Shown in pieces: positions 5,798-57,560 of a stretch of DNA of 64,000 nt. The notes under the pieces were generated by a model. That model was given only the letters and a program-made list of their open reading frames with translations, was not told where the DNA came from and did not search any database. Source of the DNA: Adineta vaga (taxonomy: Eukaryota; Animalia; Rotifera); NCBI GenBank assembly GCA_021613535.1, contig CP075495.1, positions 558,001 to 622,000 on the forward strand. Reading direction: 5' to 3'. Numbering within the stretch: position 1 is the first letter of the stretch; each line of letters opens with the position of its first letter. The position numbers were made by a program, and so were the translations under genes.

Positions 5798-6922
5798 TAT
5801 AATTTGAAAATTGAATCAATAGTTTAACTTAGATGGGTTATTTAATATAAGAAAAAAAAACACTTATGATGAATAATATTGTTTTTTAAACGAAATAATA
5901 CAATAAATATATGTGCAGGTTTCTGTATAAATATATATGCATTGGTACTTACAATTTATTTTTGTAGGAAATCAATTAGATTAAAAAGAAGTTTTGATTC
6001 GATTAAGCAATGGATGAAATGATTCGATGCTTAGAAAAGAAGGGTATGGGTGCGGCTGTAGAGGTACAGAGTTGGGTGGAGGTGAGAAAGAAGTGTGAAT
6101 CGTTTCCTCGTGTATAAATTTGCTAGTTGAATTCGTGTCACTATTGGCATACGCAGAAAATACCTGCCTTTTGACAGTCGAGGGCATAGTGAGTCGGCAC
6201 GACGAGTGTTACTTGTTCAATATCGTTTGATTAATGTGTATCAAATTATCCCTACCAATTTACTTCAATTTGATAAAATATGAGAAATTATTATATATTT
6301 ATCTTTTTCTTTTCTTGAATAATTCGTATCCTAAAATATATATCAATATTTTTGTCATTTTTTGTTACATACAATCTCTTAATATCCGTTCTTGTTGAAA
6401 AACCAGAAAATGATGTCAAATATCGACCAGAATATCTTCAAATTGAATACTGATGGAACTTAAATAAATCTCAATAAGGAAAAGTCATTCATTTTCATAG
6501 AAAATACAATTATCTGTTTACAAATAGTTAGTAATACTAAAATCATTTTTTTATCAAATGAATTATAATTTATTTAGTGATGAATTCAATATTTATATGG
6601 GAGTATAGCTATTGCTTTATCTTCTTACAATGTCTTTATTATATAAAAATTCAACTATATTCAATCATTTGAAAACGATTTAATTAAGAAAATTTTGAAA
6701 TTACATCTCTGATAATTCTTGAAAAAGAACTATGTCATTAAAAAATACACTGATTTGTGTAAGAATTCTTATTCATGGAAGATTTATCTATATTAGTACA
6801 TATCATATGCCTTGTCTTTTTAAAATACCAAATAGATGGTGGAATGCCGTAAAAATCATCCACACCCGCTCACATTCACTCACCCTTCGCCCATGCCCAC
6901 AGCGCTCAACTACACTCACCGT

Positions 6923-7018
6923 CAAAGGGGAAAAAGCACGATTTAAATCACTTTTGAGTCAAATAAATCAGCTAAACTCATTTTAAATCAATAAATCATA
7001 AATCGCTTTTCCCCTTTG
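6923..7018. mobile_element. 96-bp miniature inverted-repeat element (hAT-like MITE)
   Basis: Ends CAAAGGGGAAAAAGC ... GCTTTTCCCCTTTG, with internal TAAATCA repeats. No clear target-site duplication. Confidence 0.55.
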
Positions 7019-8508
7019 TCGTGGTCCTTATCAGGAACACCAGAAAAACTGAGTTTTGAAATTTCACTAGAAATGTTGCATAGAAATAGGCTTCTATGGG
7101 AGTAGTTTATTATGAAAGCTTCAGGTTCTAATGTTCTTATTTCAAAACAGCAACAACTAAAAGATCTGAAACATTCACAATAAAGTACTCTGACTGATGC
7201 CTATGCTTCTATGTCAAGTTTCAAATCAAATGTCATTCGATTTGGATAATATTGAAAATTACGAGAAACGAATTCAGATGAACTAATTTTCTCGAGTTGG
7301 TTTTAAAACAAAAGAACACCAATGAGAAGGTTTGAAATCAATTTTATTGACAAATCTCATTGGTATTATTAGAATATGATACGATTGATATATGTTTATT
7401 AAAAAATCAGATAATGTCAATTGCATCAACTCAATTGAGAGAATTTTGTTAAATTTCACCTGAGTTAAATCGAATTTTAAAATTTATTTATACAAAAATA
7501 AGCAACAGACTTTAAATAAATCATCCAATGGTGATCAAAAAATCATCTTCACCATTGAAATTGGTAGATAATAACTGATAAAAGAATACTTCTACGACGA
7601 TCTGATTCATCTTAAATACGTTTTCAGAAAAAGAGAAAGATCAATTCAAAACAGAAATATAACCACAAGTTGATGCATCATTTCTTTTTGTATCGTTATC
7701 TATTATAACAAAACCATGTATCAGTTTGTTACCTTTAATCGACTGATTTAATGGTTTTTTTGTAAAGTTTTGTTCGGTTGTTGATAAAAGAACAAGAAAA
7801 ATGAATCTTTTTTGGATTAAATTCAATAATAGACTTCAAATTCTCAATCGATTCTGTATATGTTTTCATCATCTTTAGTTTAAAATAATCATTAATGTAT
7901 TACTTAGAACATTTATTATGGTTTACAGTATATCTTTGGAGACCCATCGATCAGAAGTCATGAATATATATTAGTGCAATATTATTCTCAATCCTATGTA
8001 AGGATGAGTTGAAAACATGGAAATTCGTCTCTTTGAAAGTGTGTGTGTATCTGAAGTGTTTATGTCATTTATTGCTAATGTTAGACTTTTGCGATTATGT
8101 CATCCATGAACTTCACTTTAGTATAAAGTATCATTATCCATTTCATGAATGAGTCCAATGAGGTCCAAGAGACTGACGCGTTACTTGTTTTAATAAAACT
8201 CCTTTTATAAAGAAATACTGTTTTCAACAATAACTTTACAAATTTCGTCCGAAAGATTAGAATTTGTTACGAGTGTATACATCTACGCTTTCTCTATCAA
8301 ATAATCTCTAACAAAACTGTCATAAAACAAATATTTACATACTCTTCTGGCAAGAAAAAAAAGCTTCTGCGATCGATAACATTTTTTTTTATTTTTTATA
8401 ATACGAGTAAAGCACGTAAAAAGGTATTTCTTTTTTTTCTGTCTCAATTCTCTATTTCAATAGGAATAAAGCACGGTAGATTTTCATGGTATACACCAAC
8501 ATACAAAA

Positions 8509-10818
8509 ATGGCACATTACGTAAAACAAGCTCAATCGAGCTCAGTTTCTTCACCAGAGAAAAACATTCATCCATTCAAAACTTTTCAATTAGTATGGCT
8601 CGATTCTAATTTTAAATCATATGATGAAAATCAATCAACTTATGATGCATTACAAACAATTTTTACGCATAGCTTGACATTCAATGATTGCAATCAATGT
8701 GAACATTGGCTTAAAAGTTATAAAGGCAATGAAATGATTATCCTAATCATATCTGGTAAATTGTCAAGAGTAATTGTACCACGTATTCATCATTTGGACG
8801 CTATCATTGGTATTTGTATCAATTGTTTGAATCGTACTCGTTATGAAGTATGGGCGAAAAACTATGGTAAAATACTTGGTATTGCTACTGATTCAAATGA
8901 TCTTATAAAAACAATTTCTAATTATCAGACAATTTTTCAAAGTATTGAAGATTCCAAATCAATTCAAATTATTCGGAAACATTTTCTTAATTTCACTTTC
9001 GATTCAAAGCATGCATCTTTCATCTGGTATCAACTTTTACTTGAAATTTTGGTTTCATCTTCCTATCTACCACCACAGAATACATTATCTCAATTAAGTC
9101 AAATTCTTCGTCAGCACTGTGCAAATAATCCTTCTCATCTGGCTACAATCGAAACATTTGAAGAAAAATATCACTCAGAAAAAGTCATATATTGGCTTTT
9201 ATGCGATACATTTATCGGACATTTTGTGGGAAAAGCATTGCGCGATCAGAATATTCACATACTTTTTCTTTGTCGTTTTCTTCTTCAAGATGCTTATTTA
9301 AAAATAAGTTCATATTCAGTTCGAATATTCTTTAACTGCATATCGATTACGCCGATGTTACATAAAGAAATTGATTTCTTCAAAGCAAATCAAGGTGAAT
9401 ATTTAAGTTTTAACGATTTTTTATGTGCTTCAACAACTCGACCTAATATCGAATCGTTCGAAAATAATAATTATTCATTTCAAATGATTTTATTAGAAAT
9501 TCATGCATATATTCCTCATGGTGAAAAATCATCGTTCCTATACATAGATCAAAATCTTACATCTGGTAAAAATCAAACAATTAATAACATTATATTTATG
9601 TGTGGTTCAATATTTCAAATTGATTCTCTAACTGAAACATGCAATTCTATTTGCATTTTACGATTAAAATTAGTTACTGAGAGAAATCTAGGCATATTGA
9701 CAGAAATGAAACGACAACTTCGGAAAAATTCCGATTTATGTCTCATCGGTGATTTGTTAGAAAGATGTGATCAACATGAGAATGCTATCGTTTACTTCAA
9801 ATCTCTTCTTCAAAATTTACCCGCACAACATATTCAGTTAGTGAAAATACAAGATCGATTGAATAAACTTTCAGAAATCAAATATAATGATCATGTGTTC
9901 GATCTAGAATCTGTTAGTGATGTTCAATTTATTGTTGTAGGTTTGAAACCTCATTTGAACACATTGGCTTTAGCGATGTTCGACGCACTTTATCAGTTAA
10001 TGGATGGTTCAATACAAGTTTTTGAGAATGAGAGTGATGTTGATTTACGACAATTTGATGATAAGACTGTTTTTCTCTTTACAAGTGATCAGTTCATTGC
10101 CAGGATGACGGAAGAATTCGGAGAAAATGTTCTACTCTTCATTTTGGAAAGTGATCCGACTAAGGTGGACAATCAACGACGATTTCGTACAGGTGAAGAT
10201 CTCATTTGTCAATTAGCCGATGAATTGTATCGTTGTTATAATCAGGAAACATCGAAATATATTCCAATTGGTGATATAAAAACAACTGAAAATAAGAAAA
10301 ATGTAGCAGATCGCATTCACAGTACATTACGAAAAGTCCATGAAACAATCACGAAAGAAAACAATGATAATTCATTAGAAATCTGTATAGAAACAATCAT
10401 TGTTTGGCTTAGATTATATACACAATCTAATGAAACAGCAGATCAAATACAGAGTGATCTATGTGAGATCGTTTCATCTTATTTAATTTTTAATGATCTT
10501 GACATATGTCGACAATATCTATCTGATAAAACGACGAGTGCTATATTTTTAATTATGGATGGAATATACGACGAATCGATTATAACTAATTTCAAGAGTT
10601 TGAATAATGTCAAACGTTTATATCATTATCAACCATTAACATCAGCGAGTAAACCGATTCTTACTAACTTCGACGATCTTCGCTATCAAATAGCATATGA
10701 TCTTATCGCTCATTATACAGATTTAGGTACGAAATATCGTGCAAACAATGCAACAGAACAATCGCGTAACATGTTTTCAAAAGCAAAGACTCTATGTGAT
10801 TTTATTGCTGATCTTTAA
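8509..10818 (+). CDS. ADP-ribosyltransferase-like multidomain protein (VWLD receiver-like domain, degenerate ART, TPR-like helices, C-terminal receiver-like domains)
   Basis: LVWLD...F.D...C N-terminal domain, FIWYQLLLEIL, IYWL..DTF...VGKALR, and FNDFLCAST. The YRG and ExE catalytic motifs are not recognisable. The C-terminal part has a second IVWL...IFND...C module. Confidence 0.7.
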   Translation: MAHYVKQAQSSSVSSPEKNIHPFKTFQLVWLDSNFKSYDENQSTYDALQTIFTHSLTFNDCNQCEHWLKSYKGNEMIILIISGKLSRVIVPRIHHLDAIIGICINCLNRTRYEVWAKNYGKILGIATDSNDLIKTISNYQTIFQSIEDSKSIQIIRKHFLNFTFDSKHASFIWYQLLLEILVSSSYLPPQNTLSQLSQILRQHCANNPSHLATIETFEEKYHSEKVIYWLLCDTFIGHFVGKALRDQNIHILFLCRFLLQDAYLKISSYSVRIFFNCISITPMLHKEIDFFKANQGEYLSFNDFLCASTTRPNIESFENNNYSFQMILLEIHAYIPHGEKSSFLYIDQNLTSGKNQTINNIIFMCGSIFQIDSLTETCNSICILRLKLVTERNLGILTEMKRQLRKNSDLCLIGDLLERCDQHENAIVYFKSLLQNLPAQHIQLVKIQDRLNKLSEIKYNDHVFDLESVSDVQFIVVGLKPHLNTLALAMFDALYQLMDGSIQVFENESDVDLRQFDDKTVFLFTSDQFIARMTEEFGENVLLFILESDPTKVDNQRRFRTGEDLICQLADELYRCYNQETSKYIPIGDIKTTENKKNVADRIHSTLRKVHETITKENNDNSLEICIETIIVWLRLYTQSNETADQIQSDLCEIVSSYLIFNDLDICRQYLSDKTTSAIFLIMDGIYDESIITNFKSLNNVKRLYHYQPLTSASKPILTNFDDLRYQIAYDLIAHYTDLGTKYRANNATEQSRNMFSKAKTLCDFIADL

Positions 10819-10895
10819 ATACAAAAACTCTTTTCTTTCAATGTGTTTTGTGTTATAATCATAATAATTTTCTTTCTTTCTTTCGTTCTTTTCAG

Positions 10896-11408
10896 ATGCC
10901 ATCAATCAGGGATATTCAATTTGATTCATCGTATCAGGAAGCTACTTTCTGGATGTTTTTAGTTTATCAATTAGATGGAATTGGTTTAGAAGTTCCATTA
11001 CGTAATGCACAATTGATGTCCTTTGTTCAACCATTCCATAATAGACAGATTTGTCGGAATTATATGTTAGATCATAATCAAAAACTCGTAACATTATTTG
11101 CGTATAGTGAAGATATAGAAAAATGGTGGAATGATCATAGAGATGATATACCATTCAACGTTCAAGAAATTTATATCTTTTGTGATACATCGAAAGATGT
11201 GGCATGGATAAAGACTTATACAGGACGTTTTAGTTCTAAAGTAAAAGACACTTTTATTTATGATCGACTTGATGAGAAAATCTTATATTATGCAATTGGA
11301 TTTATCGGTAAATTAATAGAAGAAGCTCAAAATGATACATACGATCGATTAAAAGTTGTTCGTAAAAATTTATGCAAAGCTTTATCCAAATTATTAGATG
11401 AACAATAG
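10896..11408 (+). CDS. Small (~170 aa) receiver-like-domain partner protein, MPSIRDI...
   Basis: ATG at 10896 directly follows TTCTTTTCAG. The protein is similar to the 32153-32710 product (IRDI..DS, F.....C..Y..., TLF...I..W, W...YT...). AATAAA follows at ~11435. Confidence 0.7.
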   Translation: MPSIRDIQFDSSYQEATFWMFLVYQLDGIGLEVPLRNAQLMSFVQPFHNRQICRNYMLDHNQKLVTLFAYSEDIEKWWNDHRDDIPFNVQEIYIFCDTSKDVAWIKTYTGRFSSKVKDTFIYDRLDEKILYYAIGFIGKLIEEAQNDTYDRLKVVRKNLCKALSKLLDEQ

Positions 11409-48243: not shown

Positions 48244-51086
48244 ATGAATCAGATCATCGGAGAAGATAAGAAAACTGAACTAATCAATAATATTACTTCT
48301 GTAAGTTTCGATGATTTTTTCAGGAAATATTTATATTCTTTTATCAGTTATTATCTGACAATTCCGATGTTGAAGACGACTTTCTATCACAATTGGATGA
48401 TTTATATAAAGTCTGTTGTTTATTTTTGTATATAAATAAATTTTATAATTCGATTTAACTTAGGCGAAGTTTAATAAAATTCTATCAATTGAGTTGTTGC
48501 AATTAGCATTACCCGACTTTTCCAATAAACTTATATCAATCGTATCACTTTCTAATAATAACAACGAGGTTTGTTAATAAAATTGATTTCCGACCTTGTT
48601 ATTGATATTTTTTTAGAGAGAAAATCTATTCAACCAAATCAGTTCATCTGGAGTTGTTCCTGATAATTTTCGTTATTCTCCAAATCCAATGACATTTGAT
48701 GAGACGAACAGAACTTTTCTTGCTTATTCATCAAATATTAATCGACAACGACAATTGATTTGTATGCTACCAGAATGTTACATGGAAAACATGCAAGAAT
48801 TAACTGATATGCTCGAGTAAAACTTGTTTTTGTTTTCTTCTTCGGAAATAAAATAATGTATTTATAGTGTTTATTATTCTCATCCAATTTCTGAACAATT
48901 CGTAGTTAATGATGTTCATGTTGGTCTTGGATATGTTGGCAAATATGAGAATGTTTATCATCGATTATATATCAAAGAAATTCGTCCATTAACTTATATG
49001 ATCGTTTATATTGATCTTGGTTTAGAAGAAGAAATTCAAAAGAGTGAAATAAAGTTGAAATATTTATTAAATTATTTTAGTCAATATGAATGTTTGGTTA
49101 TTGCTTGTCGTCTTCATGGAATTGAATATAAACTTGAAAATCATGAAATGCCATTGAAGACATACGATCAATTGAAATATCTTTGTCGCGGTGGTCCTTT
49201 TCAAATTCAACCATGTGGTCAATTCAATGGAATTTTGAATGTGAAAATCTATGATCATGATAATCAATGTTTAAATGATCTTCTTGTACAGAGAGGATTC
49301 GCGGTATAATCATAAAGATGTGATTATAATGAATGTAATTGAAAATATCTTTTAGTTTTCATCATCGTTAGAAGTAAAAACAAATCAAGTTAATCATGCT
49401 TTAGATGATTATGAAATAGATGATTATGAAACATCCGTTCGTTATATTTTTATAAGATTTGTAATTCTTAATTATTTTGTTCTTCTTTTCGCTATTATTA
49501 TTAGACGACAAAAGTATCCACTGCATTTAATGATTATGTAGGAATTGTCTTTGATTTTAGTTTTTGTATTCATGAAGATTTGTTTACGTAGGAATCAGAT
49601 CCATTTCTAACAACATCCAATACTCAAACATCAAAACGTCAATATCTTAGATTTTCTGAAAATTCATATAAAATTATTCGTAATCTTTTAGAGAAAAACG
49701 CAACTCCAAAACAAACACCGAAATCTAACAATCAATCAAATAGACAATGTAAATCTTTCTTAGCTAAATTATTCTAGAAAATAGGAAATATTTAGTAAAA
49801 ACAAATGGTAATATGACAGGATTGAAAATCACTGTTGCGTCAGGCGGTCAACGATTATTCACTACCGCATTTGTATGTACTACTTCATTACGTTGCCATA
49901 TGTATGCGATCAATGATATGATCTTCTTATTTCAGTCTGGAATACTTCGAAATAATTCTAATGATCAACACCGCCGACCTAAACCGTCAAGAGTACAACT
50001 AACACCTGAAAAACGCGATATGTTTGTTGATTGGATGTGTTCATCCACCGAACAAGAATCTTTATGGTTAAATGAAACACATGGAAAAGCTTTATTGACA
50101 TACTTAGGAAGAATCTATAATCAAAATGCTCATATGTATCGTTTATTTACTCAAATGAAACAAGACATGGATCAGTCCGATGATTTGGATATTTTACATC
50201 GATTAATTGAAAAAACTAAACAAAGACATGGTTTGTATCACAGAAAAATCAATCATTGTATAATAAATCTGTTTTCTAGATGCTCAAACATCGATTGGTA
50301 AATGGGAAGATAATTCTCGAATAACTCGTCGAATAAACGATCTAAGATTTATTTTTGAATTCAATAATTCATCATCACAAAATCAAACATTCAATGTTTA
50401 TCCATCTGATTTAACAAAGATCATTAATCCTCGTATGATCAAATCTTACTTTGATCTTGGATGTGGAGATGGTGTTATCACAGCTGCTATAGGTGATTAT
50501 TTAGGTCTCAATCGAGAAAATATTCTTGGTGGTGATACATTCATTGGACAAAGTGACAAAATTACATTTGTTAAAATCGATGAAAATCAATGTACAATTG
50601 ATCTTCGTTCGTATAAAACAGATTTTTCTTCTTCTAAAACTGTTTTTTCTTTTAATTTTCTATTTAGCTAAGAATTGTGTGGATTTAATAACATCATTTG
50701 TAACATTTCATCATATTTCACAAATTGATAAAACACTTGCTGAACTTGTTCGAATCCTTCGACCAGGTGGTTATTTGATTCTTCGTGAACATGATTGTAA
50801 AACTGAACTATCTTTTTCAACAAAATATCTTCATTTTGTTCATGCAATTATGATGATTGCAAGAGTTGGAGAATTTGCAAATGTTTCAATTGATCAAGGA
50901 AAAGAAAATCTTAATTGGTCAGAGCAAAAGAAGAAAATTCTTGAATATACAAAAACAATTCATTATCGATCATGTGAGGAATGGACAAATGAACTTAAAA
51001 ATTTTGGATTTCAACTTATTTCAACAGTTTTTTATAAATCGAATAATCCTCAACGATTATTCTATGCAGTTTATCAAAAAGAATAA
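48244..51086 (+). CDS. Multi-exon Tudor-domain + class I SAM-dependent methyltransferase
   Basis: YHRLYI...MIVYIDLG.EE...IACRL.GI (Tudor-like), then YFDLGCGDG, DLITSFVTFHHI and ELVRILRPGGYLILREHD. About ten short GT-AG introns link the parts; the exon chain was not fully frame-checked. Confidence 0.65.
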
Positions 51087-51139
51087 ATGATCAAATTCTG
51101 ATTCTTTTTCATAATGAGAATTTCTTATAGATTAACTAA

Positions 51140-52652
51140 ATGGCTAATTCATCTCGAAGAAATGATAGTGAAACTATCGATTATCGAGTAAAGCATTTGG
51201 AAAATTTGCTTCATGATGCAATTATTCAAATCAATAAACTTGAAGAGAGAATTCAAAATTTGGAAGAAGAAAATATTTTACATAGAAATCAAATTGAAAG
51301 TAATTCAACAATAAATTTCTCAGTATTATATAAGAAGAAAGTCATTTAGAGTTTCAACATAACAATACAAATACACCCAGTCTCATTCCTATACAATCGC
51401 TTAATCTTCACGACAATCATAATGTAATTAATCGTAATGACAATACAAATCAAGACAAAAAGAATCAATCAAGTAAATATTTCTCATGAAAAAAAGACGG
51501 TAATTTTAGTTTGAATTATAGATGAAAATAGAAACACAACATTACAATCAACAACTCTTACGAATAGTATAAGTAAAATATTTCTTCAATGTCAATATTT
51601 TATCTTTATATATAAAAATAGAAACTCGTATGGGAAATAATGTATTTACTCGTTGGATGAATTCGCAAGAGGAAGAGTTTTCATTATGGAAAGATAGAAA
51701 GTATTCGAAATCTTTACTTTTTTATATCGGAAAAATGTATGGAGAAGAAACTAATATCGAAGAAATTATGGCGCCTTTAAGAATTGGATCGAATAATCAT
51801 GATGAACTTTATCAACTTTATCTTGTCATAAAAAGATTTGAAGAACAACCTGGTTTATCTATTTTTAATGAATAATTTTTCAATCCTAATTTGTATATTT
51901 TAGGTGCTAAAGAATCACTTCGTAAATGGCAAGAGAAAAATCGAACAAAAAATCGTTTATTTCAATTTCAAAAAATGTTTAAATCAATCAATTCTAAATC
52001 AATTCAGACTTATTTCGATTTAATCTGTCGCGATGGTTTTATTACTGCCGAAATTGGAAAATATCTTCAATTAAATCAAGAAAATATTCTTGGTGGTGAT
52101 GAATACAATAGTCATAATAAGGATATTACATATGTTAAAATTGATTTAAATCAATCAAAAATTGATCTCAGTAATTTAACTTTTGTTTTCTCTAAATTTA
52201 ATTTTAATGAATTTTTCTTTAAAGTGGACAATCATATTGATCTTATAACATGTTTTGTTGTTCTTCATCATGTTCCAGATTTAGATTTAATGTTAAGAGA
52301 AATTGTTCGTATAATGCGATTAAATGGTTATTTAATTGTTCGTGAACATGATTGTAAAAAAGAACGTTCATTAACAAATAAATATTTAAATTTTATTCAT
52401 GCTTTTATGAGAATTGCAGAAATTGGTGAATATGCTCATCGATCTAATGATAATTCTACAAATGATTGGGAATTACAGAAAAAAGAAATTATTGAAGAAA
52501 CAAATTCAATTCAATATCGAACACGTCAAGAATGGAAAAAGAAATTAGAAGAAGTTGGTTTTTGTTTAATTGCTGAAATTGATTATGATTCAAATATAAA
52601 AAATCCTCAAGTTTTATATCATGATGTTTATCAATTACAGAACAAACAATAA
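51140..52652 (+). CDS. Second methyltransferase paralog with N-terminal coiled coil, multi-exon
   Basis: Coiled-coil first exon, YFDLICRDG (altered motif I), DLITCFVVLHHV, GYLIVREHD, IQYRT..EW and NPQ. Confidence 0.75.
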
Positions 52653-53056
52653 TTCAAAATAATTGTGTTAAAATCAGGACTTCTTTTTAATTTTTTTTTA
52701 ATGTGTTTGTTTCAACACTCACGCTAATTATCCTAAAAATAATCACGATTTAATCATTCTCTATAAGGTGAAAATAAACGATTTTAAACTTAGTTTTAGT
52801 GTAAAATGTGAGTATAGTCTATTCAATATATAGTCACATCTATGTTATCTATACTTTTTAAAATCTTTTCGACAAGAAATCGATTTCAAATAACGTGATA
52901 AAAATAGATTAAGATTGATAATTTCCATGATAAAACATCAACTTCGTTGTGTATATTTTGTTCTACTGTTCATGACTTCTGGATGGATCGAAAGCTCTAG
53001 TTATGTATTTTTATCGTTTTTATTTAATTTCATTCAAATTATTTTTCATGTTCTAC

Positions 53057-53288
53057 TATAAAAGAAAAAGACAAAACACGCAACAAAGTAAGCGACTTTC
53101 GTCTTTTACCATAATAAATAACTTCTGACATCTATTTCGAATGTCCAGGTAATATAGAGGAACAGTGATTAAACATTTCTTCCCAATGGCGATAATATCT
53201 ATAGAAACGTTCCGAAAAACTTGTGCTTATCATCAATTGGTTCGCCGGGAAAAAACCCAATAATTCACATTTCTTTCAAAGACTTTAG
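53057..53288 (+). promoter_or_regulatory. TATA box, non-coding leader exon and 5'-UTR intron upstream of the GTPase triplet
   Basis: TATAAAA at 53057, donor CAG|GTAATA at 53149, acceptor TTTAG at 53288, ATG at 53295. Confidence 0.5.
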
Positions 53289-53294
53289 ATTTCT

Positions 53295-54404
53295 ATGTCA
53301 TCTCGTCGGTTTCCTAATGCTTTCACATTTAAATGTACCTTTTGTAAACAAACATTTTCAAAACAAGATACTTTTCTTTCTCATTCCATCGCATGTGAAA
53401 ATAGGACAATGAATGCTTCTTCATCTCATCGTCATTCTACTGCTTCAGATACAAACACCACCGATAAACGAAAATTCGATTGTTTATTCGATAAAGCGAG
53501 TCATGTAAAAGATAAATTAAGTGAAGAATATTATCAATCTGAAGTTGATCATGTTATTGATAATTTGCAATTTAATATTATTGTTATGGGTGCACCACGT
53601 GTTGGTAAAAGTCAATTAATTAATGCTTTATGTAATGGTGAAGTTCGTGCAGAAACAAGTGAAAGTCTTAATTCGTGTACACAAAAAATCACATCGTATG
53701 TTTTAGAAAGTCAAACAAAGACAACAGATTCATCTGTTCAATCATATAAAATTACTTTTTATGATACACCAGGAATTGAATCATGGAATGATAATGCAGG
53801 AACAACGACTATGAATGATTTTATTGCAAAAACAGATCCAATTTGTGTCATTTATTGTGCTTCGCCAGGTTCATTTGCTAAATTAGATCAACTTCATTCG
53901 ATTTTAGAATATTGTAAATCAAAAAATATCTTTTGTGCTTTGGTTTGTACAAATATGTGGTCAGGAAATCAACGGCAAGTTGTTATGGAAGAATTTCAAA
54001 AACAATTAGCATTTTTCGGTCAAAAAATTGAGAAATTCTCGAAACAAACCCATTCCTCCAATGAACATAAAGTCATTTTCTTTGGTAATGGTGCTCTTTG
54101 TACTATGGTTAATTCCATCGAATATTCCGATCCGGACTTTTCTTCTGAAATAAAACCTATTCAAGGTGTTGATGAACTTATTCATGGAATTATGGATGTT
54201 CTTGATCATGAAAAATTACTTGGTTGGTGTTATGCAGTTCTCCATCGACGAACTTATTGGGAACAACTAAGTCAAAAAGTCGGTGGATTTTTCTCATTAC
54301 GAATGACAGATATGACAAAGTTAATCAATGTTTCACCGAATGAGACAACATCAAATTTTTTAGCTTATCTCAGAGAACATTTTTTGAAAAAGAAATCTTT
54401 GTAA
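53295..54404 (+). CDS. TRAFAC P-loop GTPase 1 with N-terminal C2HC zinc finger
   Basis: CTFC...F.....F..H...C, G1 GAPRVGKS, G3 DTPG, LVCTN and MVNS. Confidence 0.88.
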   Translation: MSSRRFPNAFTFKCTFCKQTFSKQDTFLSHSIACENRTMNASSSHRHSTASDTNTTDKRKFDCLFDKASHVKDKLSEEYYQSEVDHVIDNLQFNIIVMGAPRVGKSQLINALCNGEVRAETSESLNSCTQKITSYVLESQTKTTDSSVQSYKITFYDTPGIESWNDNAGTTTMNDFIAKTDPICVIYCASPGSFAKLDQLHSILEYCKSKNIFCALVCTNMWSGNQRQVVMEEFQKQLAFFGQKIEKFSKQTHSSNEHKVIFFGNGALCTMVNSIEYSDPDFSSEIKPIQGVDELIHGIMDVLDHEKLLGWCYAVLHRRTYWEQLSQKVGGFFSLRMTDMTKLINVSPNETTSNFLAYLREHFLKKKSL

Positions 54405-54427
54405 CATTTTTTGACTTTTTTTTGTAG

Positions 54428-55231
54428 ATGTCGAAAGAATTTAGTATAGCTGTATGTGGTTCAGCACGTGTTGGTAAAAGCACAATAGTCAATGCTATAT
54501 GTGGACGAGAAGTGGCACGTACAAGTGAAAGTTTATGTTCTCAAACAGATCGAATGGAAAAATATACGATTAATCGGAATGATGAAGCAAATTCTGATCC
54601 ATATAGAATAACAATTTATGATACACCAGGTATTGAATCCTGGAATGAAGATCATGTTCGATCATATTTTTCCAAGATTATGAAAGAAAGTCAACCACTT
54701 TGTATGATCTATTGTGCATCACCGGGTTCATTCGCACGATTGGATCATTTAAAATGGCTAGTCGATACATGTATCGAATCGAATATTTTCTGTGCTTTGG
54801 TTTGTACAAATAAATATTCCGGTGGATCAAATCGACGAAAACAAGTTATGGAAGATTTTCATTCACTTTTAAATCGTTATCATCATATGACACGTGATGA
54901 ACAGAATATTAAATTTTATGGTGATGTAGCTTTGTGTACATCGGTAAATAGTATTCTCTATGAAGATCGAGATTTGGATATTCGAAAAGATGTCGAAGGG
55001 ATTAATGAACTTATCTTTGGTATTTTAACTTCATTGAAAGAAGAGAAAGTTGCAGCTTGGTGTTATACAGTTGTTGATAATCCATCATTTTGGATAACAA
55101 TGCGAACACAATTGATGGAATTTTTTGAAATTGCAAAACCAGTGGCAAAAGAATTCTATGATGAATATGGAAAAGAAATTGCTAAAGCTTTACTTCCACT
55201 TATAATTGCTATGATTAAAAGCCGAATATAA
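54428..55231 (+). CDS. TRAFAC P-loop GTPase 2
   Basis: GSARVGKS, DTPGIESW, IYCASPGSFA and FCALVCTN; clear paralog of GTPase 1. Confidence 0.9.
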   Translation: MSKEFSIAVCGSARVGKSTIVNAICGREVARTSESLCSQTDRMEKYTINRNDEANSDPYRITIYDTPGIESWNEDHVRSYFSKIMKESQPLCMIYCASPGSFARLDHLKWLVDTCIESNIFCALVCTNKYSGGSNRRKQVMEDFHSLLNRYHHMTRDEQNIKFYGDVALCTSVNSILYEDRDLDIRKDVEGINELIFGILTSLKEEKVAAWCYTVVDNPSFWITMRTQLMEFFEIAKPVAKEFYDEYGKEIAKALLPLIIAMIKSRI

Positions 55232-55274
55232 ATAAATAAATAAACTATTCTTCAATTCCACTTTTTTTTTGTAG

Positions 55275-56494
55275 ATGGTTGAGAATTTAAGACAGACAAA
55301 TATTCTTCTTTGCGGTTCTGCACGCGTCGGAAAAAGTACGTTAATCAATGCGATTTGTCAACGAAAACTAACGAAAACAAGTGAAAGTTTAAATTCCGTA
55401 ACGAAAACTGTTGATCGATATTCCTATGAATGTGGTGATGGTAAAACAACACATGAAACGATCATTTGGGATTCACCAGGAATCGAATCATGGAATGAAA
55501 ATGATGTTCGATCTTATATGTCATCGCTTATTGAACAAACACAACCATTATGTATGATCTATTGTGCATCGCCAGGTTCATTCGCAGTATTAGAACATGT
55601 CGCTTGGTTAGTATCGGAATGTTACAAGAAGAATATTTTCTGTGCTTTGGTTTGTACGAATATGTGGGCAGGAAGACATCGACAAGAAATTGTCAAAGAA
55701 TTTTGTCGATTGTTGAATAACGTTCATCCAACTGCAAATAGAATTGAAGAAGATGGAATTGTTTATTATGGTAATGTTGCTTTGGTAACAATGGTGAATA
55801 GCCAAGAATATGTAGATTTGGATTTTGATGTAAGAAAACCACCATCGGGAGTGGAAGAATTGATTTTTGGAATTGGAAAATGTTTGAAACGTGATTTAAT
55901 GTTTGCATGGTTTCGAAGTGTTTCTCAGAATACATCGTTTTGGACGAAGATGTCATCGAAATTGAGTAGTTTACTTCACATTCCAACTGATACTTTCAAT
56001 TCGTTGTATGAAGGTGCTTCGACTTTTATGGATTTTCTATTCGATATTGATAGTTATCAATCTGAATATGGACTGCCAATAATTTCCGATAGTTCAGAAG
56101 AAAATTCATATCATGATATGGAAATTATTGAAATGCCGAAAGAAATTCAGCAGAAAACATTAATATTTACATTTAAACATGAAAGTAAACGATTTTCTTT
56201 GTGGAAAATAATGTTTTATTTAAATAGATTTGTTTAGATTTAGAAGCAATGCAAGATCTTAGACATATTCTAGCAACTCTTGGTGCAAGTAGTTCTAAAA
56301 CTGAGAAAATACAAAAAGAATTTGAAGAAATATTTACAATAACTACTGAGTAAGTTAAATTTTGATTTGAAAATCATCATCTTGTTTGTTTTTCTCTATA
56401 TTTTAGATTTGATAATGTTGAACGTCTCAAAGCAATATTCAATCTATGTCAACTGACTTTTACTAATCAAATAACATGTTCCATTGAAAATTAA
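55275..56494 (+). CDS. TRAFAC P-loop GTPase 3 with spliced C-terminal extension
   Basis: GSARVGKS and DSPGIESW. Introns 56185-56237 and 56350-56406 extend the frame to TAA at 56492-56494. Confidence 0.85.
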
Positions 56495-56579
56495 GATATG
56501 AGTTTAGTTCAAATAAAACAGTAATTTTATATTTGATTATACAGATGTTATATATTTATTTAACATTGATAACATATTT

Positions 56580-56860
56580 TCGTTTCCACGTGAATATAAA
56601 TATAAAATGAAATACTATGTGTAGTAAATGCGAATACAATATAAATACTTGAAAGATTATTTTCTTGGGCTATGATCGAAGAAGATCTTTAGAAATTGTT
56701 CGTGTATAAAAGTAATCCATTTGATTAATAGCATTTGGAATTGTTGTTAAAAGAACCATAAAGATTCGTTCGGATTGTCGTTGTCGTTGAAGATTTGTCC
56801 ATGTTAATATGGAAAATATTGTTAGAATTAAACTATAAACTAAAAGACTCATATGTGCAT
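56580..56860 (-). pseudogene. GPCR C-terminal fragment
   Basis: TM5/TM6-like LVYSLILTIFSILTWTNL...MVLLTTIPNA, with no N-terminal part. Boundaries are approximate. Confidence 0.4.
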
Positions 56861-57560
56861 CATAAACAAATTAGAACTCAGCAGGTATATTTTTAATCTT
56901 ATCAATGACAAGAACGTGTGACGCGTGTTTTATGTCATACAGTCCTTTCTAATGAATTTTGTTTTACTTGAGAATATTATTCATTATTTGCTAGTCTTCA
57001 CTGGTTCGATTCCATAAATGTGAAATTAGTTGCGTAGCTATAACAATTTATTCATATATTCAGAAAGTATCACATAGAGAGCACAGCAAGAGATGTTAAC
57101 AGTTCATAGAAGTAAATAAAAAGAAAATATTTAAACAAAAAACAAGAGTAAGAGGAAAGAGAAAAGATTCCGGAAAACTCTTGACGAGTTGAATTTTATA
57201 GTTTAGAACAAAAGAGTGACGAGAAATCGAAATTAACAACTCTTTCTTAATAACTAATACAAAAACCTATGTCATTCCAACTTTATTTCATTATATTAAA
57301 CTTGACACTCTTGAATAATACTTTCTCATCAATTAAATCTTCTAATTAAAATCTTTTATCTAATCATTTAATAATATCTTTAAAACGAAATAAACGATTA
57401 TTAGTTAATATATCACGTTTCTCTTTTAAAAAAGAATATGCGTTGCTAACCTACACCATCCGTAATTTGATACTTATAAATTCATTACAAATAAGAAAAG
57501 AAAAAAAAGTAATTATTTCTAATGTTTTATTTTATTTAAACAAAAACTTTTCTATCTGAA

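What the first reader, a model, noticed from the sequence alone, without database searches (positions are those of the whole stretch)
53057..56494. Three GTPase genes packed like an operon, each ATG behind a splice acceptor
Seen: three same-strand paralogous ORFs are separated by only 23 nt (54405-54427) and 43 nt (55232-55274). Both gaps end in T-run-GTAG|ATG, and the second also holds overlapping AATAAA hexamers. There is no room for promoters. The obvious donor (GTAACA at 54401) would give a 27-nt out-of-frame intron. One TATA box and leader-exon donor (53149) lie upstream. Established: rotifers perform spliced-leader trans-splicing, which resolves operons in nematodes and tunicates. Inference: either a polycistron resolved by trans-splicing, or one leader exon cis-spliced to three alternative whole-protein exons, acting as a GTPase selector.
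Basis: partly seen in the sequence, partly recalled or inferred. Interest (0 to 1): 0.9.

Follow-up and report, generated by a model that had tools for sequence, protein, structure and literature searches.

The report
Candidate three-gene GTPase operon in a rotifer
Three related GTPase genes of the bdelloid rotifer Adineta vaga lie 23 and 43 bases apart, each downstream gene starting right at a splice acceptor, which looks like an operon cut up by spliced-leader trans-splicing; such operons have not been described in rotifers, and the leader itself was not seen here.

Summary
Three paralogous G-domain genes (about 41-49% identical) sit head to tail with 23-nt and 43-nt spacers. Both spacers end in the same 15-mer, TTTTTTTTGTAG|ATG, which occurs only 12 times in the 100.8-Mb genome.

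The genome is Adineta vaga. It carries 42 copies of the published bdelloid spliced-leader (SL) gene.

RNA-derived contigs from two independent studies run unbroken from gene 2 through the 43-nt spacer into gene 3. The two introns of gene 3 are removed in the same contigs. No contig joins the proposed leader exon (donor at 53149) to any cistron, and none fuses the ORFs.

The tight arrangement is conserved in A. ricciae (spacers 44 and 27 nt, both ending AG|ATG) and in several unnamed bdelloids.

Best reading (about 0.6): a conserved tricistronic transcription unit with almost no intercistronic region, resolved by SL trans-splicing coupled to polyadenylation, as in Ciona or the C. elegans SL1-type operons.

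Not shown: the SL on genes 2 and 3, RNA across spacer 1, and the absence of internal promoters.

The cis-spliced "GTPase selector" idea is unsupported. The first-stage scan flagged many similar arrays elsewhere in this genome, all unverified.

The parts
52653..53294 (+). Intergenic region upstream of gene 1, the only space in the cluster large enough for a promoter. The RNA contigs of gene 1 begin at 53269 and 53280. An initiator-like TCACATT lies at 53265-53271.
Evidence: The promoter role is inferred, not shown.
53295..54404 (+). Gene 1: a 369-aa GTPase with an N-terminal extension of about 88 aa carrying a C2H2-like motif. It is the first cistron.
   Evidence: RNA contigs cover 53269-54405 colinearly. 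The A. ricciae orthologue has 333 aa.
54405..54427 (+). Spacer 1 (23 nt): CATTTTTTGAC-T8-GTAG, a pyrimidine tract and AG abutting the ATG of gene 2. It is the candidate trans-splice acceptor. There is no canonical AATAAA; a variant AAGAAA lies at 54390-54395 inside gene 1.
   Evidence: No RNA contig covers 54406-54485 in any of the four runs.
54428..55231 (+). Gene 2: a 267-aa GTPase. G1 starts at residue 11. G4 reads TNKY.
   Evidence: orthologues of 263-276 aa across bdelloids. Structure model pLDDT 84.
55232..55274 (+). Spacer 2 (43 nt): three overlapping AATAAA hexamers (55231-55244), then T9-GTAG abutting the ATG of gene 3. It is the candidate poly(A) signal plus trans-splice acceptor.
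   Evidence: RNA contigs X1 record 6 and X13 record 12 run through it unbroken. X5 record 16 stops at 55275.
55275..56184 (+). Gene 3, exon 1 (G domain).
56185..56237 (+). Gene 3, intron 1 (53 nt, GT..AG).
   Evidence: Joint 56184>56238 in X1, X5 and X13.
56238..56349 (+). Gene 3, exon 2.
   Evidence: It matches the public protein P0061.
56350..56406 (+). Gene 3, intron 2 (57 nt, GT..AG).
   Evidence: Joint 56349>56407 in X1, X5 and X13.
56407..56494 (+). Gene 3, exon 3, with the stop TAA at 56492-56494.
56495..56639 (+). 3' UTR of the last cistron, at least 145 nt. The first two cistrons have at most 23 and 43 nt available.
   Evidence: X5 record 17 extends to 56639.

Best explanation
The three GTPase genes form one transcription unit, an operon, driven from the 640-bp region upstream of gene 1.

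Proposed steps (inferred unless marked):
- RNA polymerase II reads through all three cistrons.
- The precursor is cut into three mRNAs. The upstream cistron is cleaved and polyadenylated within the spacer, using AATAAA x3 in spacer 2 and a weak variant signal for gene 1.
- The 22-23-nt bdelloid spliced leader is trans-spliced onto the AG that directly abuts the downstream ATG. Genes 2 and 3 then have a 5' UTR made of the SL alone.
- The array probably arose by tandem duplication of a promoter-less unit (acceptor + ORF + 3' signal) inside an existing transcription unit.

Shown here:
- the spacing and the sequence elements;
- SL genes in this genome;
- RNA continuous across spacer 2;
- correct splicing of gene 3;
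- conservation of the layout across bdelloids.

Not shown: SL addition at 54428 and 55275, a single promoter, and 3' end formation inside the spacers.
For: - Spacing: spacers of 23 and 43 nt cannot hold a 3' UTR, a core promoter and a 5' UTR together.
- Acceptors: both spacers end in the identical strong acceptor TTTTTTTTGTAG|ATG, which occurs 12 times in 100.8 Mb.
- Organism: the genome is A. vaga. It has 42 SL genes reading GCTTATTACAACTTACCAAGAG|GTAAAT, matching the published rotifer SL (PMC3795323, Table 1). More than 50% of bdelloid mRNAs are reported to be trans-spliced (PMC1925144, citing Pouchkina-Stantcheva and Tunnacliffe 2005).
- RNA: contigs from two studies (X1 record 6, X13 record 12) run 54777-56184 without a break across spacer 2, and the introns 56185-56237 and 56350-56406 are removed in the same contigs. 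Intergenic regions have zero depth, so genomic DNA contamination is unlikely.
- Conservation: A. ricciae keeps the trio with spacers of 44 nt (ATTAAA ... TTGTAG|ATG) and 27 nt (AATAAA ... T9CAG|ATG). In A. ricciae gene 1 is preceded by 247 nt without an adjacent acceptor. The other bdelloid contigs that hold both genes of a junction have spacers of 28-106 nt, and a pyrimidine tract + AG lies 0-26 nt before nearly every downstream ATG, including on contigs that hold only the downstream gene.
- 3' UTR asymmetry: the last cistron has a normal 3' UTR of at least 145 nt.
- No embedded promoter signal: synonymous-site conservation does not rise at the 3' ends of genes 1 and 2 between A. vaga and A. 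ricciae.
Against: - No SL-bearing RNA end was seen at 54428 or 55275. Only assembled contigs were available, and these clip short dead-end branches.
- No contig in any run covers 54406-54485, so co-transcription of gene 1 with gene 2 is untested.
- A contig across two genes can be chained from overlapping molecules, so it does not prove a single transcript.
- Contig depths differ between gene 1 (13-22) and the 5' part of gene 2 (19-246), which could mean a separate promoter. The tool warns that these depths are unreliable.
- Spacer 1 has no canonical poly(A) signal.
- In Rotaria sordida gene 3 lies 1046 nt from gene 2, so tight linkage is not obligatory.
- Operons have not been reported in rotifers (PMC7986045; PMC2481426 lists them as 'ND').
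Confidence: 0.6

Rival explanations
1. Three separate transcription units with internal promoters. Genes 2 and 3 would each start transcription inside the coding region of the upstream gene, and their outron would then be removed by SL trans-splicing at the AG|ATG acceptor. This resembles the 'hybrid operon' or overlapping-gene cases of compact genomes.
For: It explains the acceptors and the RNA continuity across spacer 2 equally well. Apparent depth differs between gene 1 and gene 2. In R. sordida gene 3 functions 1 kb from gene 2 while keeping an acceptor before its ATG.
Against: There is no excess synonymous conservation in the last 100-200 nt of genes 1 and 2. These C-terminal tails are the least conserved parts of the proteins. 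Spacing below 50 nt is kept in two Adineta species. No transcription start data exist either way.
Confidence: 0.2
2. Stable di- or tricistronic mature mRNA without trans-splicing. The downstream ORFs would be translated by reinitiation or leaky scanning, as in the polycistronic mRNAs of green algae.
For: In two runs the contigs cross spacer 2 at full contig depth and no SL branch is seen.
Against: The perfect, conserved pyrimidine tract + AG before every downstream ATG, and the AATAAA signals in the spacer, would have no role. The upstream ORFs are 267-369 codons long and contain many AUGs, which makes reinitiation inefficient (established knowledge of eukaryotic scanning). In run X5 the contig breaks exactly at 55275.
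Confidence: 0.08
3. One reading: one leader exon (donor at 53149) cis-spliced alternatively to three whole-protein exons, acting as a GTPase selector.
For: A GT donor in good context (CAG|GTAATA) and a TATAAAA box exist upstream.
Against: No RNA contig covers 52922-53268, and no joint leaves 53148 in four runs. The gene 1 contigs start at 53269 and 53280 with colinear genomic sequence, which would be intron in this model. Contigs run from gene 2 into gene 3. A. ricciae has only 247 nt upstream of gene 1, with a different sequence.
Confidence: 0.03
4. One gene encoding a three-G-domain protein, with the spacers removed as tiny introns or bypassed.
For: Same strand, very short gaps, and a GT at 54401.
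Against: The 27-nt intron is out of frame. RNA contigs are colinear through 54330-54405 and through 55142-55275 with no joints. Every species keeps a stop codon and an ATG for each cistron, with spacer lengths that are not multiples of three. Public annotation models gene 3 as a separate 369-aa protein.
Confidence: 0.01

Closest known systems
Ciona intestinalis and Oikopleura dioica operons, and the C. elegans 'SL1-type' operons (established knowledge; PMC1488885 covers Ciona)
   Same: Same-strand cistrons with essentially no intercistronic region. The poly(A) signal of the upstream gene lies a few tens of nt, or less, before the trans-splice acceptor of the downstream gene. A single SL class serves both operonic and non-operonic genes.
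   Different: The phylum is Rotifera, where operons have not been reported (PMC7986045). SL addition and the polycistronic precursor are not demonstrated here. The cistrons are three paralogues, not unrelated housekeeping genes.
C. elegans SL2-type operons
   Same: Co-oriented genes under one upstream promoter, with downstream cistrons matured by SL trans-splicing coupled to upstream 3' end formation.
   Different: Those have intercistronic regions of about 100 nt with a U-rich element, and a specialised SL2 family. Here the spacers are 23 and 43 nt, and only one SL sequence was found in the genome (at most 1 mismatch).
Chaetognath operons (Paraspadella gotoi; PMC12460157)
   Same: Chaetognaths are gnathiferan relatives of rotifers. 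There 18% of genes lie in SL-resolved operons, there is no operon-specific SL, and operons were defined by spacing below 250 bp.
   Different: The SL sequences differ, and those authors regard the origin as independent. Chaetognath operons are enriched in housekeeping genes.
Septin / GIMAP (AIG1) / Toc34 / IRG group of TRAFAC GTPases (the proteins)
   Same: G1 (GxxRVGKS) and G3 (DTPG) motifs and a Rossmann-like G-domain fold with long C-terminal helices. Weak sequence and fold matches to septins, GIMAP2/7, Toc34, Irgb6 and EngB.
   Different: No specific family reaches its Pfam threshold except the generic MMR_HSR1 and marginal Roc, Septin and Dynamin_N hits. G4 is non-canonical (TNKY or TNMW in place of NKxD). 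There are conserved cysteine-rich motifs (CMIYCASPGSF, FCALVCTN). Every named hit among the 120 listed is a bdelloid; the rest are unnamed environmental sequences.

Membership tests
SL-resolved metazoan operon | Two or more co-oriented genes with an intercistronic distance too short for an independent promoter | tested here: met
   Spacers of 23 and 43 nt; 44 and 27 nt in A. ricciae.
SL-resolved metazoan operon | The organism has SL RNA genes and performs SL trans-splicing | tested here: met
   42 SL genes with a GT donor in G000. The SL sequence and its usage come from PMC3795323 and PMC1925144.
SL-resolved metazoan operon | A polycistronic precursor RNA spans the cistrons | tested here: inconclusive
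   RNA contigs bridge gene 2 to gene 3 in two studies. Nothing covers spacer 1. Contigs cannot prove single molecules.
SL-resolved metazoan operon | Downstream cistrons carry the SL at an acceptor upstream of the ATG | not testable with these tools
   Acceptors are present and conserved. No SL loose end appeared in the contigs. Raw reads were not on offer for these runs. Metagenome pattern scans gave 0 hits and then 6 chance hits.
SL-resolved metazoan operon | One promoter upstream of the first gene and no internal capped starts | not testable with these tools
   Only indirect evidence: a 640-nt upstream region, gene 1 contigs starting at 53269/53280, and no synonymous constraint at the 3' ends of genes 1 and 2.
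SL-resolved metazoan operon | A 3' end formation signal for the upstream cistron lies before the acceptor | tested here: inconclusive
   Spacer 2 has AATAAA x3, 29 nt before the AG. Spacer 1 has only a variant AAGAAA inside the coding sequence. Orthologous spacers mostly carry AATAAA or ATTAAA.
C. elegans SL2-type operon | Intercistronic region of about 100 nt and a specialised second SL | tested here: not met
   Spacers are 23 and 43 nt. A single SL sequence class was found with at most 1 mismatch. A divergent second SL was not searched for exhaustively.
Pfam MMR_HSR1 / TRAFAC GTPase (the proteins) | G1 P-loop and G3 DxxG motifs, with a score above the gathering threshold | tested here: met
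   33.6-45.8 bits against a cut-off of 21.9 for all three proteins. GxxRVGKS and D(T/S)PG are invariant.
Pfam MMR_HSR1 / TRAFAC GTPase (the proteins) | Canonical G4 NKxD guanine-specificity motif | tested here: not met
   The aligned position reads TNMW (genes 1 and 3) or TNKY (gene 2). T127 and N128 are invariant across 93 homologues but the Asp is absent. Nucleotide specificity is therefore open.
Septin, GIMAP/AIG1, Toc34 | A family-specific profile above threshold, or a clear best fold match | tested here: not met
   AIG1 scores 13.8-22.6 bits against a cut-off of 27. Septin scores 21.4-27.5 against 26.2, covering the P-loop region only. Foldseek TM is 0.4-0.5, spread over EngB, septins, GIMAP and Toc34.

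The most novel reading that the evidence does not exclude
Bdelloid rotifers possess true operons that have been conserved through evolution, of the kind with almost no intercistronic region. In these, polyadenylation of the upstream cistron and SL trans-splicing of the downstream one occur within 23-43 nt, and the SL forms the whole 5' UTR. This GTPase trio, conserved between Adineta species and seen in other bdelloids, would be a first documented example for phylum Rotifera. It would also be an example of an operon that grew by tandem duplication of a promoter-less cistron. Three more junctions of this type in the same 64-kb window or its first-stage notes, and many unverified first-stage notes elsewhere, suggest the phenomenon is genome-wide.
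Probability: 0.55. Interest if true: 0.65.

Novelty: new member of a known kind. Interest (0 to 1): 0.5.

Why it matters
SL trans-splicing and operons tend to occur together in animals (nematodes, tunicates, flatworms, chaetognaths). Rotifers have stood as an SL-bearing phylum in which operons were listed as 'not determined' or 'not reported' (PMC2481426, PMC7986045).

A conserved and precisely delimited test locus makes the question answerable with existing A. vaga RNA-seq or a few RT-PCRs. If confirmed:
- it adds a phylum to the operon map;
- it bears on whether SL trans-splicing predisposes genomes to operon formation;
- it affects gene annotation and promoter assignment in bdelloid genomes;
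- it matters for how promoter-less genes, including foreign ones, can become expressed in bdelloids. This last point is my inference.

The result would not be conceptually new. A specialist would find it welcome rather than astonishing.

Tried and rejected
- Direct SL evidence:
  - Read laying offered only assembled contigs. No SL loose ends were listed, and there is no coverage of 54406-54485.
  - An exact-protein look-up of gene 2 found nothing.
  - All 12 contig look-ups returned unspliced, genomic-looking contigs of other bdelloids. None carried an SL.
  - Two metagenome pattern scans for the SL 3' half plus the gene start or G1 motif gave 0 hits and then 6 unrelated GC-rich chance matches. 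These blanks have little power.
- Leader exon at 53149: rejected for lack of any joint or coverage.
- Fusion by short introns: rejected on frame arithmetic and colinear RNA contigs.
- The joint 52080>55494 is a contig of some other locus sharing 23-28 nt. It has 28 foreign letters between the two sides and is not a splice.
- The bacterial promoter/terminator scan is uninformative in a eukaryote, and showed no enrichment.
- Complex prediction for gene 2 with gene 3 exon 1 was not folded, for a policy reason of the tool. There is no verdict, and I make no claim that the proteins bind.
- Sequence and fold searches did not place the proteins in any named GTPase subfamily.
- A horizontally acquired bacterial operon was considered and set aside. 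Gene 3 has two spliceosomal introns, every named hit among the 120 listed is a bdelloid and the others are unnamed environmental sequences. The bacterial models hit score far below their cut-offs.
Full report
**Observation.** The + strand holds three ORFs: 53295-54404 (369 aa), 54428-55231 (267 aa) and 55275-56237.
- All three are G domains of the generic MMR_HSR1 type. Genes 2 and 3 are each 41% identical to gene 1 and 49% to each other.
- The spacers are 23 nt and 43 nt, and each ends in the identical 15-mer TTTTTTTTGTAG|ATG.
- That 15-mer occurs twice in the window against 0.11 expected. It occurs 12 times in the whole 100.8-Mb genome, and these are two of them.
- Spacer 2 begins with three overlapping AATAAA hexamers (55231-55244).
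- The GTAACA at 54401 would give a 27-nt intron that puts the ORFs out of frame.

**Organism and spliced leader.**
- The window is G000:C2:558001-622000 of a 100.8-Mb assembly in six contigs.
- Its proteins are named Adineta vaga in NCBI.
- P0061 (I4U23_005841, 369 aa) is the spliced product of gene 3, not gene 1.
- The published rotifer SL is GGCTTATTACAACTTACCAAGAG (PMC3795323, Table 1). It is present 42 times as GCTTATTACAACTTACCAAGAG followed by the donor GTAAAT.
- Bdelloids are reported to trans-splice more than half of their mRNAs (PMC1925144, citing Pouchkina-Stantcheva and Tunnacliffe 2005).

**RNA evidence.** Only Logan contigs were available. I laid four runs from four studies on 51800-57400.
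- Three runs (X1, X5, X13) are clearly RNA. Their contigs lack the GT..AG introns 56185-56237 and 56350-56406 and two introns of the upstream methyltransferase gene. The intergenic regions 52922-53108 and 56662-57035 have no depth.
- All three genes are expressed.
- X1 record 6 and X13 record 12 run from 54777 inside gene 2 through the 43-nt spacer into gene 3 without a break, with gene 3's first intron spliced out and the contigs ending at its exon 2/intron 2 boundary.
- X5 record 16 ends at 55275, the predicted acceptor and poly(A) zone, with three unmatched letters.
- No contig in any run covers 54406-54485, so the junction of gene 1 and gene 2 is untested.
- X1 record 3 ends at 54405, one base after the stop codon of gene 1.
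- The contigs of gene 1 begin at 53269 and 53280 with colinear genomic sequence. Nothing covers 52922-53268, and no joint leaves 53148.
- No joint fuses the ORFs, and the contigs are colinear through 54330 and 55142.
- No SL loose end was listed. Contig assembly clips short dead-end branches, so this is not evidence of absence.
- The tool itself warns that a contig across two genes does not prove one molecule.

**Gene 3 structure.**
- The exons are 55275-56184, 56238-56349 and 56407-56494, with the stop at 56492-56494.
- I translated the exons separately by reference and did not build the joined coding sequence. The public protein P0061 served as the joined form.

**Comparative evidence.** Orthologues of gene 2 are stand-alone proteins of 263-276 aa across Adineta, Rotaria and many unnamed bdelloid contigs.

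| Locus | Gene 1 to gene 2 spacer | Gene 2 to gene 3 spacer | Notes |
|---|---|---|---|
| A. vaga (window) | 23 nt, T8GTAG\|ATG | 43 nt, AATAAA x3 ... T9GTAG\|ATG | |
| A. ricciae (L023) | 44 nt, ATTAAA ... TTGTAG\|ATG | 27 nt, AATAAA ... T9CAG\|ATG | |
| Rotaria sordida (L025) | 104 nt | 1046 nt | each ATG still preceded by a pyrimidine tract + AG |

- In A. ricciae the whole neighbourhood is syntenic: two methyltransferases, the three GTPases, then an NHL/EGF gene. Its gene 1 is preceded by 247 nt with no adjacent acceptor.
- Nine further contigs of other bdelloids were read. Those that hold both genes of a junction have spacers of 28-106 nt. A pyrimidine tract + AG lies 0-26 nt before nearly every downstream ATG, usually with AATAAA or ATTAAA in the spacer.
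- The R. sordida case shows that tight linkage can be lost.
- Third-codon-position identity between A. vaga and A. ricciae is flat at about 0.65. It does not rise at the 3' ends of genes 1 and 2, which are also the least conserved protein segments. There is therefore no sign of embedded conserved promoters, though the test is weak.

**Mechanism proposed.** A promoter in 52653-53294 drives one precursor through all three cistrons.
- Each downstream cistron receives the SL at the AG abutting its ATG, so the SL forms the entire 5' UTR. The SL contains no ATG and supplies a G at position -3.
- The upstream cistron is cleaved and polyadenylated inside the spacer.
- The last cistron has an ordinary 3' UTR of at least 145 nt.
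- Shown: the anatomy, the SL genes, RNA continuity across spacer 2, and conservation.
- Inferred: the single promoter, SL addition, and coupling to 3' end formation.
- I put this at about 0.6.

**Rival explanations.**
- Internal promoters inside the upstream coding regions with trans-spliced outrons (0.2) cannot be separated from an operon without mapping of capped 5' ends.
- A stable polycistronic mRNA translated by reinitiation (0.08) leaves the conserved acceptors and poly(A) signals unexplained.
- A fused three-domain protein (0.01) is contradicted by frames and by the RNA contigs.

**Comparison with known systems.**
- The layout matches the operons of Ciona and Oikopleura and the SL1-type operons of C. 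elegans: no real intercistronic region, one SL, and the poly(A) signal next to the acceptor.
- It does not match the SL2-type operon, which has a spacer of about 100 nt and a specialised SL.
- For rotifers, operons are listed as 'ND' (PMC2481426) and 'not reported' (PMC7986045).
- PMC12460157 mentions rotifers loosely among lineages with trans-splicing and operonic transcription, without data.
- Four literature searches found no paper describing bdelloid operons.

**The proteins.**
- They are TRAFAC-class GTPases with G1 (RVGKS) and G3 (DTPG).
- G4 is non-canonical: TNKY in gene 2 and TNMW in genes 1 and 3.
- They share conserved Cys-rich motifs and a long C-terminal helix (model pLDDT 84).
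- Sequence and fold searches give only diffuse similarity to EngB, septins, GIMAP, Toc34 and IRG.
- The genome has about a dozen family members, several in tandem.
- Gene 1 adds an N-terminal C2H2-like motif.
- Their cellular function is unknown. A test of whether genes 2 and 3 bind each other was not run by the tool.

**Wider context.**
- The same window holds two more junctions with the same architecture, at 51087-51139 between two methyltransferase genes and at 10819-10895.
- The first-stage scan has at least 18 unverified notes of operon-like arrays elsewhere in this genome.
- The scan has therefore seen this pattern before on other DNA of the same genome. None of those notes has been followed up.

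**Verdict.**
- This is a real, conserved and well-delimited candidate operon.
- Interest is moderate (0.5) because the decisive RNA-end evidence is missing, although it is easy to obtain.

Noticed in passing
window 51084-51142: A second junction of operon type lies between two methyltransferase genes. The stop TAA (51084-51086) overlaps AATAAA. A 53-nt spacer follows, ending TTTCTTATAG, 9 nt before the ATG at 51140. A. ricciae keeps the pair with a 61-nt spacer ending TTTTCTTTCAG (L023 3070-3130).
   Followed up: partly
window 10816-10898: A third junction of the same kind. The 769-aa ORF (8509-10818) is followed after 77 nt by TTCGTTCTTTTCAG|ATG, which opens a 170-codon ORF at 10896. It is the only other pyrimidine tract + AG|ATG with a long ORF in the window.
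   Followed up: no
window 54724, 54751, 54776 and 54973-54983: The RNA contigs show two haplotypes in gene 2 (G>T, A>G, G>C, at about one third of the depth). They also show three fixed differences from the reference (T>A, G>A, C>A) in all three A. vaga RNA runs. These are allelic or strain variants, not editing candidates, unless a matched DNA run shows otherwise.
   Followed up: no
G000 SL loci, e.g. L001-L006 (C1:2551160-2551336, C2:8684673-8691979, C5:9884356-9925969): SL RNA genes often occur as divergently oriented pairs about 155 bp apart and in clusters. On C5 one cluster holds about 20 copies within 45 kb.
   Followed up: no
window 53295-56494, G4 motif (e.g. 53950-53961, 54806-54817): All three GTPases lack the Asp of the NKxD motif (TNMW or TNKY). 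T and N are invariant in 93 homologues. Nucleotide specificity may not be guanine-restricted.
   Followed up: partly
G000:C3:17851218-17852946, C2:451652-453299, C1:14393515-14396968, C5:5828292-5830662: Other members of the same GTPase family occur as tandem or divergent pairs elsewhere in the genome. Some carry in-frame stops, which may be introns or pseudogenes. No ohnologous copy of gene 2 above 50% identity was found.
   Followed up: partly
L025 (Rotaria sordida) 6817-7862: In R. sordida the spacer between gene 2 and gene 3 is 1046 nt, against 27-63 nt in the other bdelloid contigs that hold both genes. This could be an insertion or a break-up of the operon in this lineage.
   Followed up: no
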